Below, one piece after another: positions 43,634 to 52,929 of a stretch of DNA of 64,000 bases. The stretch covers positions 62,001 through 126,000 of the forward strand of contig CDMY01000185.1 in NCBI GenBank assembly GCA_001179505.1, given 5' to 3'. The notes under the pieces are model-generated. The model searched no databases and was not told the origin of the DNA. It worked only from the letters and a program-made list of their open reading frames with translations. The translations under genes were made by a program, and so were the position numbers. Each line of letters begins with the position of its first letter. The first letter of the stretch is position 1. This DNA is from Vitrella brassicaformis CCMP3155. Lineage: Eukaryota; Protista; Chromerida.

Positions 43634-45265
43634 TCAGTGGTCGAAGACGGGTGTGGGGACATCGCCGCGGTGGGCGCTGCCCATTGGGAGGCGATCGACC
43701 CTGGACAAATGGACCTAACAGAGAGGGGGGGAGGAGGTCAGCCAACAGAGAGAGCAGGATGTTGTCATATTGTGCTGTTGATTGAGGTGGTGGGGGTGGT
43801 GGCTGACCTGGAAAGCTGGCGTGTGCCACCCGCCGCAGGAGCACTGCAGGCCGTGCCACGACCATGCGCCAAGCTTGCCCTTGCACTGCACACATGACAA
43901 TCCATCGACCAGCAGACAGACAGACGAGGAGGTTCATGTGATGGTTGTTAATGTATCTGCTGTTTGCCATTACTGTACCCTCTGATTGGAGCAGACGAGC
44001 TTCCCAGTTTGGTCCTTCTGAACAGACACACAAATTGCCCTTTCCTCTCCGTCTCTCTCTGTGCTGCGTGTGGGGGCGTGTGAGTGGTGCCTTACGAGGT
44101 CGCCCATCCACTTCATGGGCTCGACAAACACCGAAGTGCACTCGTGGCCCGGTGTCTGACAACAGAGAACGATGGACGCACTTATGGTGGTACCTGTGCA
44201 TACCGCAGAACTCGTCTTCTTCCTCTGGAAGCTCTTCCACTTCCACCCATCTCTGGCGTGGTGTGGCAGAAGGTTGCTCTCATAGAACAGGCGCGTGCGA
44301 CACTTCCTGGAACACATATATACACAAACACACCTACCAGCGACACCAACAATGCACTCATTGTCGGTGTCTCACTCACGCACTTGCATGTGTATTGCCA
44401 CTCTGCCAGCTCCCTGGAACTTGCCGGCGGGCGTCTGCTCCCACCTGATGCCGCAACGTCCCCATCATCTTGGCCGCTGCCGCCCTCATCGCTTAGAATG
44501 CCCTCTTCCTGGTCCAGCTGGTCATCAAATAGCAGGCCTTCAGGGTCGTCACTAATGTCAGGAAACGGCAAAGATTGTCCCCGGTCACACGCGCGCTTCC
44601 ACAGCCGATACTGCCTGTGGTGCGGGCTGCTGCCGGCCGTGGTGCATCCCATCCTCTCGTACAGCCTGAGCTGCTTTCGGAAGTTCAGATTGGGACAGGT
44701 TGGGGGGTGTGCGTCCTCCACCCAGCTGAGTGCGTCGTCGAACGACATCTTGGAGGCCTTCATCAGATACGCGATGCAGACGGCAGCGCTTCGGCTGATG
44801 CCCTGGTGGCTAGAGAAAACAGCGCAGCAGAGAGGATCGATGTCACTGTGACCTTCAATCCCCCACCCAGTGTGTGTGCCGTGCCGCGGCCCCCCTACCA
44901 GTGGATGAGCACATCTGCCGTTGGCTCGCCGTCCATCACGCCTTCAATGAACTCGCATGCCTCGTCCAAATGAGCGATGAGATCAGACTCATAGTCGTCA
45001 AGAATCGGCACCTCGTGGAACAAAGTCCTGCTGAGGTCGACACACTCGGCCAATCCCTCAGTCAGGGCCTCTCGCAGCCCCAAGCCAGCCGACACGACGG
45101 CCGCCAGTGACTCATCCGCAAGCGCATCGATGGCGTCGTCGAGAGAACCAATCTGACAGCAGGAAGATGAAATGAGAGTCGCAATGCAGTGCATGACGTT
45201 TGCGCATCCTCCCAAGCGTGTGTGCGATGTACCAGGAGATGAGGCCGGACTTTCGATGCGACCAT
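43634..45265 (-). CDS. DUSP12: Dual-specificity phosphatase 12 / YVH1 with C-terminal zinc-binding domain
   Basis: The active site is rebuilt across an intron: VLIH-tg|c-HQGISRSAAV = HCHQGISRS. Also PNLNFRKQLRLY, YTCK..KCRTRLF, CTSVFVEPMKWM and CKGKLGAWSWHGLQCSCGGWHTPAFQ|VHLSRVD. Confidence 0.92.
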
Positions 45266-45477
45266 CTTCGTCTACTCGTTCTTCAATTCATCCAATAGAT
45301 CCAGATATGTGTGACCTCTTTCTTTTATTACCTTTCCTTCGTTTCCTGCGCCTCATCTGCGAGCTACAGCTCGCAGCGTGGCGAGCTTGCGCAACGGTCG
45401 CCCGTTGTGCAGCGAGGCCTCCATCAGCACCACACCAGCGCGCCCTTCCTTTCTTCTCCTTGCCGGCGTCTTTCACC

Positions 45478-46502
45478 ATGTCCTTGTCTGGTCCTTTCGC
45501 TGTGATCTGTGTCCTTTGCTTTGCCTGCGTGAACGCGGTCAAGTGGATCGAGGTGAACGAAGGGCGCAATGAGAATGGACATCCCGGCATCGGATCATCC
45601 TCTGACATGGCCATCCATACTTGCACAACACCACGAGGCTCGAAGATGCCAGCTTTTTATGCTTCTTATTCGCGTGAAATAGGTCCACTTCCCATTCATG
45701 ATCCCGCTGATGGCACACTCCTTTCTCCTGGGTATAATTATGGCGACATTGTATGGAACACGGGTACGGCTCACACACACACACCGCCTGAGTGGTGGTT
45801 TCTCTCCTCACACGGCACGCGTATGGGTTTGTGTGCGGTCTGTGTGATGATGCACAGGGTACGTTGGCTGCAACATTAACAAGAGGTTCTGGGGGGTAAA
45901 CGCCAGGTACACGCGTTCCGACAACTTCTACGAGACGAGTGATGCTCGCCTGAAGACGAATATTCAAGACCTCCCTGCGGACAGCAAGGCCGACATTTAC
46001 GACAAATTCGCGCAGATTCGCATGCGGACCTTCCAGTGGCAGCCAGAGAGCATGCCCAATGTGCCCGAGGAAGAACTCGCCGAAACGCAACTCGGTAAGC
46101 TGTCCATGGTGTGGATGTAAGAAATGAGTCGGCCGACTCATACCTGCCGGCCGGCCTGCTGCTTGCTTCATGCCGCCATGCTCTCTCTCTCTGGTCGATG
46201 GATGCTGCGCAGGTGTGCTGAGTCAAGAGCTTGCTGAGTTGTTCCCCGGGAGTGTCGCCCTGGACACCTCGGAAGCCGAGTTGTCCAGACCGAATGGCAC
46301 TGAAGCCATCAAGGGCGATGCCTACTACGTGAGTCTGTCATCCCTCATGTACAACAACATGGTCGTCACTCAGCGCCTGCAGCAGGAGACTCAGCGCCTG
46401 CAGCAGGAGCTGGCCGACATCAAGGCGCTGCTGGCTCGCGACGACAGCCCCCCAATGCGCAGGCTCTTCGAGGCCCGAACTGACTTACTGAGTGAGTACT
46501 AG
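45478..46502 (+). CDS. Secreted about 270-aa protein with a C-terminal Peptidase_S74 intramolecular chaperone (ICA/ICD) and coiled coil
   Basis: Exons 45478-45763, 45858-46094, 46213-46502 (813 nt, in frame). Signal peptide MSLSGPFAVICVLCFACVNA. Motifs FYETSDARLKTNIQDL, FQWQ, LGVLSQELAELFP, YVSLSSL and QRLQQETQRLQQELADIKALL. Confidence 0.85.
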
Positions 46503-47457
46503 CCAGTAGTGATTTTCCATGTCAAAATGATAGGATAATTTGTCAGATGCATTAGGGGGCGGGGTGGGTGGGTAGGTAGGTAGGTAGATTAGATGTGCGT
46601 GCTAATAATGCATGCGCTTTTCTACTACAACACGCGCCTGTCTAATTGAAATTGATGCGAAGGTGTGTATGGGGAATGGGTTGCATGCGACGTGATACGC
46701 TGTTAGTGCTTTCTTTGCCTGGAGGGAGGGACCGAATGTGTGCGCGCACGCTGCATGATCGAGTCTCTGCACGGGGGCGGGCGGGCAAGAGCTTCCCGAC
46801 CCGTGGTGTCGGCAGCGTGCGTGCAGCCGTGTGAGTGGCAAGGTCAGACCTTGTGACTCTGCGGTAATTCTTTTTGGTTGGCTGGCTGGCTGGACGGATG
46901 GCTGTCCATTCGAATTCCTTGGGCGTCAGCGGTGGGTTTCTGTCTGTCTGTCTCGGTCTCTCTCTCTCGGCGTGGCTGAATCCATATGTACGGATGCCAC
47001 ACGAGGCTGCAGAGAGAGACGAGTGTAAGCATGTCTGTCTTTTCTGTTGTGTCTGTGTGTTCTGTTGTGTTGTGTTGTTGAGTTGTGTTGTTGTGTTGTT
47101 GAGTTGTGTTGTTAAGTTGTGTTGTTTCTGTCGCGTGTGTGGGGTGGATGGGGTGTCGAGTGGTGGGGGGGTTGACACGTATGGGCACTGCATGGTGGGA
47201 GGGTGGGGTGGAGGGACAGCACGGACACACACTGGGATGAAAGCACAGATCTTTGAACGGCTCTACAGGGGTCTCCGCTCAAAAATACACACCCAACACA
47301 CTCAACACCCATCATACCCAACTACACTTAAGTGGCGTCTGATGTGTAGTATATCGTCTGGCACCACATCTCGATCGATATCGCGTGGCGTACACAGCAC
47401 GGACAGGGCAATGATGTGGATAAAAGCAACACACACACACACACGCACACACACACG

Positions 47458-47882
47458 TCACTCGTCGTCGGCAGGGCCACCCGGCTTGACGTGAATGTTG
47501 AACCTGTACTCCTGGTCGCAGCCGACGTACGAGTCGCACATCAGGTACAGCACGTAGTCGTACTCGCCGCTCGTGCCGGGCGCCTCGAACTCCAACTTGA
47601 CAGTCTGCTCTGACCTGACAGACCGACGCGACGCAATCAGACACACACACAGACATGTCGTGCAGTACGTGTGTGTCAAGTCATGTCATGTGTGGGGGGT
47701 AGTCTTGGCTTACTTGGCGATGGAGATGCGCTTGATGAATGCGAGGTTGCTCTCCTCCCCACCCTCTGCTGCTGCTGCCTTGGTCTTGGGTGCCCTGCCG
47801 GCGATGACCCACCACTGCTCGTCCTTCTCCTTGGGATAAAAGGGAGCAAACACGGGGCCCAACGCCTCATCCTGGTATAACA

Positions 47883-47915
<33 letters not shown>

Positions 47916-49195
47916 GGGCATGGAGACAGCCACACGTGTGAGAAGGATGTGGGGTGGTGTAGGGAGGGTGGGTTTACTTGTAGGTCTCTTTCGAATTTGA
48001 TGTTCATTTGGACGGCGTCTCCCTCTGCGATGTCGTCGGGGCTGATGACCTCGTGCTCCATCGTCACCATGGGGTACCGGTTGCACGCCTGACATTCGTC
48101 ACATACACACACCGACAAACACGCAGTCAGGTCAGCCATCATGTTTGTCGACTTGCAAGTCAGCCGCCTTGAGGGCGCACGCACCTTTGCCACATCCGCG
48201 ACTTGTGTCTGCGAGAGCGGCTGCAGCAGCGTGGTGCGCTGGTCGTCCTCCATGTTGAGCAGGTCAAAGACGTCGGCCACCTCCATCTCTGCGTTGACCA
48301 TCCATCCACCCCACACACGTCGATCCACACACACCAGACGTCGGTCTGTGTCTGTCTGGCTCGTTGGGTACCTTTGGCTTTGCTGATGAGCGTCTCGTCG
48401 AAGTGCGGCAGCTGCAACAGTGGCGACTGTGCGGTGGTCATGGCCTGGACGGTCATCTGGCAGATCTCCATGGCCACCAATGCCGGCTGCAGCCAGCCGT
48501 TGCTCGACAACACGTCAACCATGCCCTGATTGATGAGATGAGATGACACACGCACACACACAGAGACAGACATGTGGGGTGTGTGTGGTGTGTGCGCGAA
48601 AGGTGTGTTCACCTGTGTGAGCCTGACGGCGTGGTCCAGCACATAGCGCTGGTCCGCCTGCAGGTCTGTCGATATCGCTGTGCGGTTGAAGTGAGCCTGC
48701 ACACACACACACACACACACACACATCCGACCTCCCTCTCTCCCCCTCTCCCTTCGGCCCCCTGCCAGCTTACATAAAGGAGTATCTGTGCCTTGATGTG
48801 GGGCTCGTTGATCTTCTCGCGGTCCGACAGCCGCACGCCCAGCTGGCTCGCCAGGCCCTTGAGGACTGCCTCCTCCCCCGCTCTGACCGGGACGTAGTCG
48901 TATTCGGTGGCCGCACAGATGATCTCTATCATGGCCTTGCGCTTGGTGGAGGCTCGCAGCGCACGGTTGAACTTCTCTGCACACACAGAGACGGGTGTGG
49001 GAGGGAGAGGGCGAGGGGTGTGTGTGTGGTTGTGTGGCTGGCTGACCAATGGTGGTGTATCTGATGTAGTAGAAAGCGGCGATGAGCCCGAGGTTGAGGG
49101 CCGAGAGGTCGACTTCCTCCTCGACAGAGAGGCACTGGGACTGCTCGAGCGCCTCGACCGTGGTCTCAACCAGCTCTGACAGGTGATCTGTGGCA

Positions 49196-49228
<33 letters not shown>

Positions 49229-50259
49229 GGAGAGAGAGATTAGACGCCTGGTGGGTTTGGCTGGGGTTGTCTTGGATGCACACACGCAGCTGACCTGATA
49301 TGTGCCCGTGTGTGACGCCTTGCAGGCCGTAGTAATTGGGGTTCTGATGACACATGAGGTGGTATGACATGAGATGGTTCGGTGGTGATGTTGTGTGTCT
49401 CTTGCATGCCTCGAGAGCTCCTTTCTCACCTTGCTGATCCTCCTGTAGTAGAAGGTCCAGGTGAGCCAGTCGATGGCGTCCTGCTTGTTGTCGATGGTCT
49501 TGAGCACCACCTCCGCGTTGATGAAGTCGGCCATACGCTGCATCCACCACACCACACACACACAGAGAGATATCACCAAACGAACCAACAAGACGGCCGA
49601 TACAGATCGTCGTCCCCCTGACCTCCTTCTGGTCGAGATGTGATTCAACGGGCAGCGGCTCGTAGATAAATTTCTTGTAGTACTCTTTCTTGGACGAATG
49701 GCACAGCAGACAGAAGACCCCCGACTTGTCGATGTGCGGCCGCGTGGCCCGGCCCATCATCTGGATGATGTCGCTGACGGGGTAGTCCACCCAGCGATTC
49801 TCCCGGCCGTCGAACTTCTTGGTGTCCATGACAATCACCAGGTGGGCCGACATGGTCATGCCCCACGTCAGCTGCTCGGTCGTCACCAACACCTGGATGG
49901 CACCCGACTCGAACAGCCGCTCGATCATCCCTCGCTCCGACTCAGAGAACCCTGCAGCGGATGCATCAAACAGAGAAGGCAGGCCGCCACACGTGTGTGC
50001 GTGTTGATGGGGTGCTGGTGGTCGTGGTCTCCTTACCTTCGTGGTAGAAGCCGACACCGAATTCAAGCGTTTGCTTGAGGGCCTGCAGACACGCAGACAG
50101 AGAGAGAGGGTGGTGTCATTTCGATGGTTCCGTGTGTGGCTATGTGGGGGTGGAGGGGGGGTGATCAGACAGTACGAATAAGGAGGCTTCAGTGTGTGTG
50201 TGCACTCAGATATATGCTTGTCAAGTTGGGTTGTCTCCATCCCTTCACCCACCCCCCCC

Positions 50260-50294
<35 letters not shown>

Positions 50295-52929
50295 TGTCCC
50301 CTCTTGCGCACCTTCTCCCTGGCGCCTTTGATCTGGTTGGCCATGACGTCGTCCGGCACGTGCAGGAACCTCTTTGGCTTGTCGTCAGCGGCAGCCTGCA
50401 GCAGCAGGTCGATCGCCGTCAGCCGGCACTGCTTCCTGCAACCACATAGTCAGGTGATCACGGAGAGAGAGATGTCAGGTGTCCATGTGTGTGGATGGTG
50501 GCAGGGCCGAGTAAGGGGTACTGACTGTACCTGTCAGCCACAAAGATGATGACAGGTTTGTCGGGCGACTTGGTCTTGATGGCCTGGTAGACGGTCTTGC
50601 CCATTGCCAGCAGGCGGCTGCCGCGGTAGTACATGTCGAAGCCTGACAGAACAAATCACACCACATCACATCACACAAGCCATGTGGGTTGGTTGCGGCG
50701 ACACTGCTCGTCGCACAGACGCACCGTAGATGGCGATTTCCAGGGGGACAGTGCGGATGTTGGGGCCAAAGTTGAAGAGGTTGGTGCTGCCCGCGCCGAT
50801 CCACTCAGCCACATCCTGTGACAGTGACAGGAAGACACACACACATCGGTGGAGTGGCATCCCTCCATCCATCCATGGCTGTGTGTGGCGGCACCGCACC
50901 TTGGCGTTGGACAGAGAGCATGCCAGTCCGAGTATGCGGATAGACTGGTTCGTCTGGGCGGAGATGTACCGCATACGCGACACGCACACCTCCATCGTCG
51001 GGCCGACCTGTGTGTGAGTGAGTCGCACACAGACAGCATCCATCGTAAGGGGGTGGGGGTGGGGGTGGATGGTGTTCCGGTCTCTCTCTCTCTCTCTGTG
51101 TGTGTGTCTCACTTCGGAGTCCAGCAGCTGCAGCTCGTCCGCAATGAACAACCGCAGCTGCGTCGCCACCTTCTTGCTTCGCCACCTGCATACACACACA
51201 CACACACACATACACACACGAGCCCTCAGACACACATCCCAAGACGAAGTGGTGGACCTTCGTGAGATGAGGTCCCATTTGTCGGGTGTGGTGATGAAGA
51301 TGTGGGACTGCTCGAGTATCTTGAGGTCGGTGTTGAGGTCCCCCGTCGGCTCGTTGACCCGCAGCCCCAGCTTGCCGAACTTGGCGGACCACTCGGCGAA
51401 GCGCTCGCGGGCCGTCAGCTCGTAGGGCGCCATGTATACGCAGCGCTTCAAACCTGCACACACACACACAGAGAGAGAGAGATCGATCGATGCATCCATC
51501 CATCCATCCATTGTCCGGTGGTGGGAGGGAGTATACCATCGCCTTTGAGCATCCGGAGGATTGCGAACTCTGCGCAGATGATTTTGCCGGCGGCCGGTGA
51601 GGCGCAGATGAGGACGTTGTCGCCGGAGCTGTAGAGCGACGAGAAGACCTGTGTCTGTATGGGGTTGAAGAACTTGATGGACGACGAGTAGAGGGCCTCG
51701 GCCTCGGGGAACCGCAGAGCTGTCACGGGCAGCGGCTGCAGGTCCAGCAACTCTGAAGGACACAAGGACACACAGAAAAAGGTGTGATGCTTCCATTGTT
51801 CCTCTCTCTCCCTCTCTCTCTCTGCGTGTGTGTGTGTGTGTGTGTGCTGCATGCCTGTGTGAGGCGGGTTCTTCTCAGGCAGGATGAGGCTCTTGAAGGA
51901 CACCGGCAGCAGTGACTCGGCGTGCAGCCACCGGTCGGAGACCACCCGGATGAAGTACTGGGGCGGCAGGGGGTCCATCACGGGCACCGTGAAGTTGACT
52001 GTGTGCTCCTCCTCCACACCTCGCTGGGTCAGCAGGAAGATCTACACACACACACACGGGGAGCTTTGGTATGTGTTTGTTGCCGTGGTCTCTCTCTCTC
52101 TCTCTCTCCGTTGCATGCCTCGTGGTGGAGGATGGTCTCGCCGTCGACATCCTCGACAAAGATCCAAAAGGGCTCGGCAGTGCCGTGAATCTGACCACCA
52201 CACCGCCACACACACACACACCACCCATCCGCACAAACCACCACACACCACACCCACTGGCCGGCACCGAATCCGAATGCCGAATGCTCACCTTGGGATC
52301 CCACTGGAAGTCCGGCGTGATGGTGAGCTCCACCAGCAGACACGACCGTGTGATGGGCTGGACGTACGCCGAGAGGTCGAGCTTCGGGAACTGGTGGATG
52401 AATCTGTGGATCTTCTTGCCCAGGTTGGGGAGGCGCAGGAGCTCGCCGATCTCGGTGGACGAGAGGTCGTAGTACCGCTCCCATGAGAAATCCTTCTTCT
52501 CCATTTTGCGCAGGATGGGCTCCTCCAGGTTGAACTGCCGCATGGGCGTCATCGAGGCCCACATGCGCTTGTCGATCATCTTGCAGAAGGAGAGAGCCCG
52601 GTGGGCGAGGGCGGCCCAGCCACGCTTGAGGCAGATCTCGTATATGGCTCGCATAATCCGGCCGGCATTCTGCTGCACGTAAACCTGAGTAGACACTCCA
52701 CGCAGCAGGGAGGGCACGTGTGTGGCTGGGCTGGCTGGTTGTGCCGTTCGTTTGGTCTTTGGCTGGCTGACCATACCATGTCCGCCATGAGTGCGAATCC
52801 CTCGAGCTTGAGCTTGGAGATGTAGGCCTGGAGCAGCACGTTGACCTTGGACGAGGCCGTCTTTTCCTCCATCGAACCCTTCACCGGCACAGGCACCTGT
52901 CACACCACACAACACAGGACACAGTCGTC

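What the first reader, a model, noticed from the sequence alone, without database searches (positions are those of the whole stretch)
45478..46502. Secreted eukaryotic mini-protein carrying a phage-tailspike-type self-cleaving chaperone (Peptidase_S74/ICA) with an intact Ser-Lys dyad
Seen in sequence: the ORF track misses this gene because two introns split it. Spliced, it gives about 270 aa. It has a signal peptide (about 20 aa) and a roughly 100-aa novel passenger (VKWIEVNEG...YYNYGDIVWNTGYVGCNINKRFW-type aromatic/Gly-rich sequence). Then come ET-S123-DARL-K128-TNI (Ser codon at 45938, Lys codon at 45953), FQW, GVLSQELAELFP, YVSLSSL and a terminal coiled coil. Established: SDxRxKxxI...GxIAQE...coiled coil defines the intramolecular chaperone of phage endosialidases and tail fibres and of MYRF/Dictyostelium MrfA. 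That domain trimerises its passenger and cleaves itself off just before the Ser, using a Ser-Lys dyad five residues apart. Inference: this is a domesticated, intron-bearing gene that secretes a small, kinetically stable trimeric spike, adhesin or peptide effector by autoprocessing. It has neither a MYRF DNA-binding domain nor a large phage tailspike body. I know of no described secreted minimal-passenger ICA system in alveolates.
Basis: partly seen in the sequence, partly recalled or inferred. Interest (0 to 1): 0.9.

Follow-up and report, generated by a model that had tools for sequence, protein, structure and literature searches.

The report
Small secreted self-cleaving fibre-cap protein, Vitrella
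A coral-associated alga (Vitrella brassicaformis) expresses a real, intron-containing gene for a small, probably secreted protein ending in the self-cleaving trimerising "chaperone" domain otherwise known from phage tail fibres and the animal factor MYRF. It belongs to an undescribed gene family in this alga, but its function is untested.

Summary
The window is Vitrella brassicaformis CCMP3155.

Transcripts start upstream of the ATG at 45478. The public 214-aa model, auto-named "Peptidase S74 domain-containing protein", therefore lacks the first 56 residues, including a signal-peptide-like N-terminus.

Pfam PF13884 matches over its full length (44.5 bits, cut-off 22). Ser123 and Lys128 align with the MyRF catalytic dyad. 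The AlphaFold model's best PDB matches are all intramolecular-chaperone (ICA) structures: MyRF, phi29 gp12, T5 pb1 and endoNF.

The gene is not viral or bacterial DNA. Its neighbours are cellular (Brr2 helicase), its GC3 matches the host, and both introns share position and phase with Vitrella paralogues. I confirmed five paralogues of similar small size, one of which has lost the dyad. The scan's own notes list about 30 S74 loci in this genome.

The passenger (residues 21 to about 90) resembles nothing, not even the paralogues.

Secretion, trimerisation and cleavage at T122|S123 are inferred, not shown. I found no paper describing such a family. Verdict: a new variant of a known kind, of moderate interest.

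The parts
45401..45477 (+). Minimum 5' UTR
   Evidence: Spliced transcript contigs begin at 45401, 45410 and 45422 in three runs. There is no ATG between 45344 and 45477, so 45478 is the first AUG.
45478..45537 (+). Start codon and signal-peptide-like segment (aa 1-20), with predicted cleavage after V-N-A20
   Evidence: This is the only strongly hydrophobic segment of the protein: residues 7-18, Kyte-Doolittle mean 3.2 over 11 residues. Paralogues P0002, P0003 and P0021 have comparable hydrophobic N-termini. No SignalP was run.
45538..45763 (+). Exon 1 remainder: unique passenger (aa 21-95)
   Evidence: There is no Pfam hit. The best Atlas score is only 0.86. An HMM of the paralogue passengers scores 2.2 bits, below the best shuffled control at 9.1 bits.
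45764..45857 (+). Intron 1 (94 nt, GT..AG, phase 1, inside the Gly96 codon)
   Evidence: The joint is seen in four runs. Paralogues P0002, P0003 and P0017 have an intron at the same position and phase, just before G-x-[IV]-G-C.
45858..45937 (+). Pre-cleavage stalk-like segment (aa 96-122; GYVGCNINKRFWGVNARY...ET)
   Evidence: It aligns with the MyRF stalk just upstream of the cleavage site (7dc3, whole-hit E 0.027; profile alignment). Model confidence is low here.
45938..46094 (+). First half of the ICA / Peptidase_S74 domain, with Ser123 (45938-45940) and Lys128 (45953-45955)
   Evidence: Pfam PF13884 matches. In the alignment Ser123 falls on MyRF position 587 (Ala in the S587A crystal construct) and Lys128 on K592. 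PMC8326128 shows that S587 and K592 are essential for cleavage.
46095..46212 (+). Intron 2 (118 nt, GT..AG, phase 1, inside the Gly175 codon of G-V-L-S-Q-E)
   Evidence: The joint is seen in four runs. P0002, P0003 and P0017 have an intron at the same position and phase.
46213..46334 (+). Second half of the ICA domain (GVLSQELAELFP plus a beta hairpin)
   Evidence: The Pfam match ends at aa 189. The model places strands at aa 189-214 with pLDDT 82-94.
46335..46502 (+). C-terminal helices (aa 216-250 and 254-269) and TAG stop
   Evidence: The model shows long helices with pLDDT 72-95. This region matches the C-terminal helix of solved ICA structures.

Best explanation
This is an expressed three-exon nuclear gene of Vitrella brassicaformis encoding a 270-aa precursor. 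The precursor has four parts: an N-terminal signal peptide of about 20 aa, a roughly 100-aa passenger, a complete intramolecular-chaperone autoprocessing (ICA, Peptidase S74) domain, and C-terminal helices. The first 70 or so passenger residues are unique; the last 30 or so resemble the beta-helical stalk that precedes ICA domains. The proposed mechanism, by analogy with endoNF, T5 pb1 and MyRF, runs as follows. The precursor enters the ER. Three chains associate through the ICA domain and its C-terminal helices. The assembled trimer positions Ser123 and Lys128 so that each chain is cut between Thr122 and Ser123. This releases a small trimeric N-terminal product (aa 21-122) that is exported, and a 148-aa chaperone fragment. 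Shown here: the gene model, expression, domain and fold identity, conservation of the dyad, and host (not viral) status. Inferred: secretion, trimerisation, cleavage, and any extracellular role such as wall or matrix component or adhesin. The gene is the most divergent confirmed member of a Vitrella family of small signal-peptide-plus-ICA proteins. In that family a conserved phase-1 intron separates a variable passenger exon from the constant stalk-ICA cassette.
For: Gene model and expression:
- Spliced contigs in four runs skip exactly the two predicted introns, and transcripts begin at or before 45401.

Domain and fold:
- Pfam PF13884 scores 44.5 bits against a cut-off of 22, covering profile positions 1-57 of 58.
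- The MyRF ICA crystal sequence aligns with Ser123 on position 587, Lys128 on K592, Arg126 on R590 and F159/W161 on Y615/Y617. The roles of those MyRF residues come from PMC8326128.
- A family profile hits 7dc3 at 2.7e-24, tail fibre 6f45 at 3e-20 and T5 tail fibre 8hqz at 3.5e-16.
- The AF2 model has pLDDT 80-96 across the ICA part. Its 13 best PDB matches are all ICA structures; 7dc3 gives E 1.2e-6, TM 0.67 and rmsd 2.9 A.

Host gene, not foreign DNA:
- The downstream neighbour is the Brr2/SNRNP200 helicase.
- GC3 is 0.67, against 0.65 for Brr2.
- Both introns are shared in position and phase with paralogues on other contigs that also carry cellular genes.

Family:
- The nearest relatives in 1.84 billion representative proteins are Vitrella proteins of 141-276 aa.
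- In a tree, the Vitrella proteins form one group with support 85/68.

Targeting:
- There is a single N-terminal hydrophobic segment with V-x-A at -3/-1 and no other membrane-like segment.
- Three complete paralogues have signal-like N-termini.
Against: - No signal-peptide predictor was available, and the N-region has no basic residue.
- The passenger gave no confident structure (pLDDT below 50 for most of it), so nothing shows that it forms a trimeric beta structure.
- The MyRF paper reports that in MyRF the stalk does not trigger cleavage, so the phage-style coupling of passenger folding to cleavage need not apply.
- The residue aligned by eye with MyRF K671 appears to be Ser.
- Paralogue P0017 has lost both Ser and Lys, so the family does not always need cleavage.
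- No protein-level data exist for secretion or processing.
Confidence: 0.6

Rival explanations
1. The ICA module serves here mainly as a trimerising coiled-coil scaffold. Either no cleavage occurs, or the C-terminal ICA fragment is the functional product rather than the small N-terminal piece.
For: Paralogue P0017 lacks both dyad residues (QDSRGT) yet keeps the rest of the domain. The ICA part is far better conserved across the family than the passengers. In MyRF the C-terminal coiled coil is the main driver of trimerisation.
Against: In this gene Ser123, Arg126 and Lys128 and the aromatic pair near the scissile bond are all kept in the canonical SDxRLKxNI context. In every studied ICA, these residues go with cleavage.
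Confidence: 0.15
2. The protein enters the secretory pathway but is not released. It is delivered to an internal compartment or built into the thick cell or sporangium wall as a structural fibre cap. Alternatively, the N-terminus is an uncleaved signal anchor.
For: The hydrophobic core is only about 12 residues and the N-region is uncharged. Unverified scan notes describe giant and mucin-like S74-capped proteins in the same genome, which suggests matrix or wall roles.
Against: There is no second hydrophobic segment, no KDEL/HDEL-like C-terminus and no transit-peptide-like sequence; the region after the predicted cleavage site is acidic. Nothing directly separates this reading from true secretion.
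Confidence: 0.2
3. The locus is foreign or dead DNA: a bacterial or phage contaminant, a recent insertion of a polinton-like or giant virus carrying a fibre gene, or a pseudogene.
For: S74 domains are typical of phage tail fibres and are widespread in fibre genes of polinton-like viruses of protists (PMC12220804). The closest non-Vitrella hits are bacterial or metagenomic.
Against: The gene has two spliceosomal introns that are removed in RNA and shared with paralogues. Its neighbours are cellular and its GC3 is host-like. The frame is intact. No relative turned up in IMG/VR or JGI metagenome contigs with the close-relative scan.
Confidence: 0.02

Closest known systems
MYRF / Dictyostelium MrfA ICA domain (PDB 7dc3)
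   Same: Best sequence and fold match among solved structures. The Ser-x4-Lys dyad, the aromatic pair near the cut site, the GV[IL][AS]QE motif and the C-terminal helix are all shared, and there is a short stalk-like segment before the cut. It is also a eukaryotic, intron-bearing gene.
   Different: This protein has no NDT80-type DNA-binding domain (no Pfam hit) and no transmembrane segment after the ICA domain. The topology is reversed in logic. MYRF cuts a cytosolic transcription factor off an ER anchor, whereas here the whole precursor is predicted to be lumenal or secreted.
Phage tailspike and tail-fibre ICA domains (endoNF 3gw6, phi29 gp12 3gud, T5 pb1 4uw8/8hqz, long tail fibre 6f45)
   Same: Same Pfam family and fold, and the canonical SDARLKTNI motif is closer to the phage consensus than the paralogues' motifs are. 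The domain sits at the C-terminus and is expected to be cut off after trimer assembly.
   Different: The passenger is only about 100 aa, with no enzymatic or receptor-binding body. The gene is a cellular eukaryotic one with introns and a signal peptide, and it is not part of a virion gene cluster.
Small (about 130-260 aa) bacterial or prophage S74 proteins
   Same: Similar total length and architecture: a short N-terminal part plus S74. Atlas clusters of 215 aa and 196 aa score 0.94. Metagenomic hits P0010 (212 aa) and P0015 (251 aa) lie on contigs with bacterial-type gene content.
   Different: Only 26-34% identity, confined to the ICA part. The bacterial proteins have no introns and no eukaryotic signal peptide.
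S74-capped fibre proteins of polinton-like and giant viruses of protists
   Same: An S74 domain at the C-terminus of proteins made in a protist cell (PMC12220804).
   Different: Those are large modular virion fibres, up to 3.9k aa, inside viral elements. This is a 270-aa gene among housekeeping genes with family-wide conserved introns.

Membership tests
Peptidase S74 / intramolecular chaperone autoprocessing (ICA) domain | Match to Pfam PF13884 above the gathering threshold | tested here: met
   44.5 bits against a cut-off of 22, covering profile positions 1-57 of 58, at aa 123-189 of the 270-aa product. Exon 2 alone scores 32 bits.
Peptidase S74 / intramolecular chaperone autoprocessing (ICA) domain | Catalytic Ser and Lys five residues apart, aligned with endoNF S911/K916 and MyRF S587/K592 | tested here: met
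   S123-D-A-R-L-K128. Ser123 aligns with position 587 and Lys128 with K592 of 7dc3. The equivalence and essentiality of these residues come from PMC8326128.
Peptidase S74 / intramolecular chaperone autoprocessing (ICA) domain | ICA fold ending in a long C-terminal helix | tested here: met
   The AF2 model has pLDDT 80-96 in this part. The top 13 Foldseek PDB hits are all ICA structures (7dc3, 3gud, 4uw8, 3gw6).
Peptidase S74 / intramolecular chaperone autoprocessing (ICA) domain | Homotrimerisation and self-cleavage just before the Ser | not testable with these tools
   Only monomer prediction was available, and there are no protein data.
Peptidase S74 / intramolecular chaperone autoprocessing (ICA) domain | Trimeric beta-helical stalk or fibre upstream of the cut site | tested here: inconclusive
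   Aa 88-122 align with the MyRF stalk segment within a hit of E 0.027, but the model is unconfident there.
MYRF / MrfA membrane-bound transcription factors | NDT80-type DNA-binding domain N-terminal to the ICA domain | tested here: not met
   No Pfam family at E up to 1 on exon 1 or on the N-terminal part of P0001.
MYRF / MrfA membrane-bound transcription factors | Transmembrane segment C-terminal to the ICA domain | tested here: not met
   The only hydrophobic segment is at aa 7-18.
Phage or viral tail fibre / tailspike gene | Location in a viral or prophage structural gene cluster, with a large receptor-binding or enzymatic body | tested here: not met
   Neighbours are cellular (Brr2). The introns are spliced. 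The passenger is about 100 aa with no domain hit. No IMG/VR relative was found.
Vitrella small signal-peptide + ICA family (defined here) | Shared intron positions and phases, nearest-neighbour status, and the shared 3-residue insert after the SDxxxK motif | tested here: met
   Both introns are shared with P0002, P0003 and P0017. The best hits are Vitrella proteins at E 2e-15 and 2.5e-10. The Vitrella proteins group together with support 85/68. The insert is visible in the alignment. The passengers themselves are not detectably alike.

The most novel reading that the evidence does not exclude
Vitrella has turned a phage- or virus-type fibre-capping module into a cellular cassette system. A constant stalk-plus-ICA cassette is joined, through a conserved phase-1 intron, to interchangeable and rapidly diverging passenger exons. 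This would yield a repertoire of dozens of secreted, self-cleaving trimeric proteins, from 100-aa knobs like this one to giant fibres. It would be a eukaryotic counterpart of phage receptor-binding-protein diversification, used for wall building, adhesion, or binding of bacteria or viruses.
Probability: 0.3. Interest if true: 0.75.

Novelty: new variant of a known kind. Interest (0 to 1): 0.5.

Why it matters
Outside viruses and bacteria, the only studied use of the ICA/S74 self-cleaving trimerisation domain is MYRF/MrfA, where it frees a transcription factor from the ER membrane. Here the same domain sits in an ordinary intron-bearing host gene with a secretory leader and a tiny passenger. 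The gene also belongs to an expanded family in a chromerid alga, the free-living relatives of apicomplexan parasites.

If cleavage and secretion are confirmed, this would be a second, independent eukaryotic use of the module: making extracellular trimers. It would also offer a compact natural system of about 100 aa plus ICA for studying chaperone-assisted trimer folding. I found no paper describing it; the only prior record I met is the automatic domain name.

Tried and rejected
- **Word-indexed homologue searches** with exon 1, with P0001 and with the Vitrella alignment returned only Vitrella proteins, and even missed known paralogues. They are uninformative about wider distribution.
- **The search for related loci with the family alignment** failed because no conserved stretch was long enough. 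With P0001 alone it found no relative in IMG/VR or in JGI metagenomes. That method finds close relatives only.
- **Passenger identity:** no Pfam hit. The best Atlas feature score is 0.86, to unnamed phage-like clusters, which is below the level that means anything. An HMM of the paralogue passengers scored no better than shuffled controls. I therefore dropped my first impression, from the MAFFT alignment, that a Cys and a P-A-L motif are conserved with the paralogues.
- **Origin of the family:** a low-GC freshwater clade (P0007, P0018, P0019) sits next to Vitrella in the tree, but with weak support (82/79). Its short contigs gave no telling neighbours. I make no claim about the donor.
- **Plastid targeting:** considered and judged unlikely because the region after the signal peptide is acidic. 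This is my own reading with no predictor.
- **Paralogue P0021:** threading with canonical GT..AG introns found no solution, so it is not used for the intron comparison.

Full report
**What is there.** The window comes from Vitrella brassicaformis CCMP3155; the only database protein matching exon 1 is from that organism. Joining 45478-45763, 45858-46094 and 46213-46502 gives an uninterrupted 813-nt frame of 270 aa. Both introns are GT..AG, 94 and 118 nt long.

**Transcript evidence.** I laid contigs from four public runs on 44800-47300. Every run has one contig that skips exactly these two intervals, with all 237 nt of exon 2 between the joints. These contigs start at 45401, 45410 and 45422. 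No ATG lies between 45344 and 45477.

The upstream contig (44899-45152 / 45233-45343) carries a CT..AC intron, so it belongs to a divergent minus-strand gene. The first AUG of this gene's transcript is therefore 45478.

The public model P0001 uses the same introns but starts at Met57, giving 214 aa. It lacks the hydrophobic N-terminus. Three complete paralogues have comparable N-termini, which supports the longer model.

**Domain identity.**
- Pfam Peptidase_S74 scores 32 bits on exon 2 alone. On the spliced product it scores 44.5 bits over profile positions 1-57 of 58, against a cut-off of 22.
- A single-sequence search of PDB sequences finds the MyRF ICA crystal construct 7dc3. In that alignment Ser123 falls on position 587, Arg126 on R590, Lys128 on K592, F159/W161 on Y615/Y617, and GVLSQE on GVIAQE.
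- PMC8326128 shows that S587A and K592A abolish MyRF cleavage, that these residues equal endoNF S911/K916, and that Y615/Y617 flank the cut site.
- A profile of this protein and its 20 best relatives hits 7dc3 at 2.7e-24, a long-tail-fibre tip (6f45) at 3e-20 and the T5 L-shaped fibre (8hqz) at 3.5e-16.
- An AlphaFold2 model built on that alignment has pLDDT 80-96 over the ICA part and two long C-terminal helices.
- The model's 13 best Foldseek PDB matches are all ICA structures: MyRF (E 1.2e-6, TM 0.67, rmsd 2.9 A), phi29 gp12, T5 pb1 and endoNF.

Membership in the S74/ICA family is therefore established by sequence, by the catalytic residues and by fold. Trimerisation and cleavage could not be tested.

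**What it is not.**
- No DNA-binding domain or any other Pfam family is present.
- There is no hydrophobic segment apart from aa 7-18. It is therefore not a MYRF-type membrane-bound factor.
- It is not viral or bacterial DNA. The downstream gene is the spliceosomal helicase Brr2, and GC3 (0.67) matches Brr2 (0.65).
- No other S74 copy lies in the window.
- The close-relative scans of IMG/VR and JGI metagenome contigs found nothing.

**Family.** An exhaustive HMMER search of 1.84 billion representative proteins gave only 20 hits at E up to 0.001.
- The best two hits are Vitrella proteins: P0002 (215 aa, 2e-15) and P0003 (276 aa, 2.5e-10).
- Further down come P0021 (210 aa), P0017 (220 aa) and the fragment P0014 (141 aa). 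All are auto-named S74 domain proteins.
- The remaining hits are unnamed metagenomic proteins. Two of similar size lie on contigs with bacterial-type gene content.
- The paralogues lie on different contigs among ordinary cellular genes.

Threading three paralogues onto their loci showed five or six introns each. Two of those introns coincide in position and phase with the two introns here. One is phase 1 in the Gly codon just before G-x-[IV]-G-C. The other is phase 1 in the Gly codon of G-[VL]-x-[AS]-Q-[ED].

A maximum-likelihood tree of the ICA region puts the six Vitrella proteins on one side of a branch (85/68). The window's protein is sister to the other five (96/92). Shared introns, a shared three-residue insert after the SDxxxK motif and this tree together indicate one old acquisition, followed by duplication inside the lineage.

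P0017 has Gln and Thr in place of the Ser and Lys, so some members cannot cleave.

The scan's own unchecked notes list about 30 further S74 loci in this genome, including mucin-like and giant-fibre forms. I used these notes as leads only.

**The passenger.** Residues 21 to about 90 match nothing.
- Pfam gives no hit.
- The Atlas score of 0.86 is below the level that means anything.
- An HMM of the paralogues' passengers scores 2.2 bits, less than the best of 2,000 shuffles at 9.1 bits.
- Only the short G-Y-V-G-C stretch at the conserved intron is shared.
- Residues 88-122 align with the MyRF stalk that precedes the cut site, but the monomer model is unconfident there.

The conserved phase-1 intron therefore falls at the boundary between a variable passenger exon and a constant stalk-ICA cassette. 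Exon 2 is also flanked by two phase-1 introns. This is compatible with passenger exchange by exon shuffling. That is an inference, not a result.

**Mechanism proposed.** The steps are: ER entry through the signal peptide; trimer assembly nucleated by the ICA domain and its C-terminal helices; cleavage by the Ser123/Lys128 dyad between Thr122 and Ser123; and export of a trimer of the 102-aa N-terminal fragment. The first step rests on my own hydropathy and -3/-1 reading and on the paralogues. The other steps rest on analogy with endoNF, T5 pb1 and MyRF.

The rival readings are a non-cleaving trimer scaffold, retention in a wall or internal compartment, and foreign DNA. They are weighed in their own sections; the foreign-DNA reading is contradicted by the splicing and intron data.

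**Novelty.**
- The domain call itself is already in public databases as an automatic name.
- Small S74 proteins are common in bacteria and phages.
- S74 domains are known in fibres of protist viruses.
- AlphaFold DB clusters named as S74 proteins also match the model, but their organisms were masked, so I cannot say from this output which are eukaryotic.
- I found no paper on cellular, secreted, non-MYRF ICA proteins or on this Vitrella family.

I rate it a new variant of a known kind, of moderate interest. Most of the interest lies at the level of the family rather than this single gene, and the scan has already noted other members of that family on other DNA of this genome.

Noticed in passing
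window 44899-45343 (minus strand): The divergent upstream gene has a CT..AC (minus-strand GT..AG) intron at 45153-45232. Its transcript contig ends at 45343, only about 60 nt from the first contig of the S74 gene (45401), which suggests a short shared bidirectional promoter region. No Pfam family was found on its ORF pieces.
   Followed up: partly
window 45478-45645: The public gene model (P0001, 214 aa) starts at Met57 and so omits the signal-like N-terminus. Transcript contigs and paralogues favour the start at 45478.
   Followed up: yes
window 46553-46595: A (GGTA)n-type microsatellite lies just after the stop codon. Transcript assemblies break there, so the 3' end of the mRNA is not defined. 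It is unclear whether the 46596-47108 contigs belong to this gene or to the convergent Brr2 gene.
   Followed up: no
window 47458-51796 (minus strand): ORF pieces with Sec63, Helicase_C, SNRNP200 wHTH and DEAD domains indicate the Brr2/SNRNP200 spliceosomal helicase gene, running convergent to the S74 gene.
   Followed up: partly
L004:6001-7387 (paralogue P0017): This Vitrella paralogue has Gln and Thr in place of the catalytic Ser and Lys (QDSRGT) but otherwise keeps an ICA-like sequence and the shared introns. The precomputed Pfam hits do not list S74 for it. It is a probable non-cleaving member.
   Followed up: partly
L006, L007, L008 (freshwater metagenome contigs, 38% GC): S74 proteins P0007, P0018 and P0019 share the three-residue insert after the SDxRxK motif with the Vitrella family and sit next to it in the tree with weak support (82/79). 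Their neighbours have no PHROG or Pfam hits, so their origin (giant virus, polinton-like virus, or other) is unknown.
   Followed up: partly
L001-L004 (paralogue loci): Paralogues P0002, P0003 and P0017 have five or six short introns (about 55-370 nt), against two in the window's gene. This implies intron loss here or gain in the others.
   Followed up: partly
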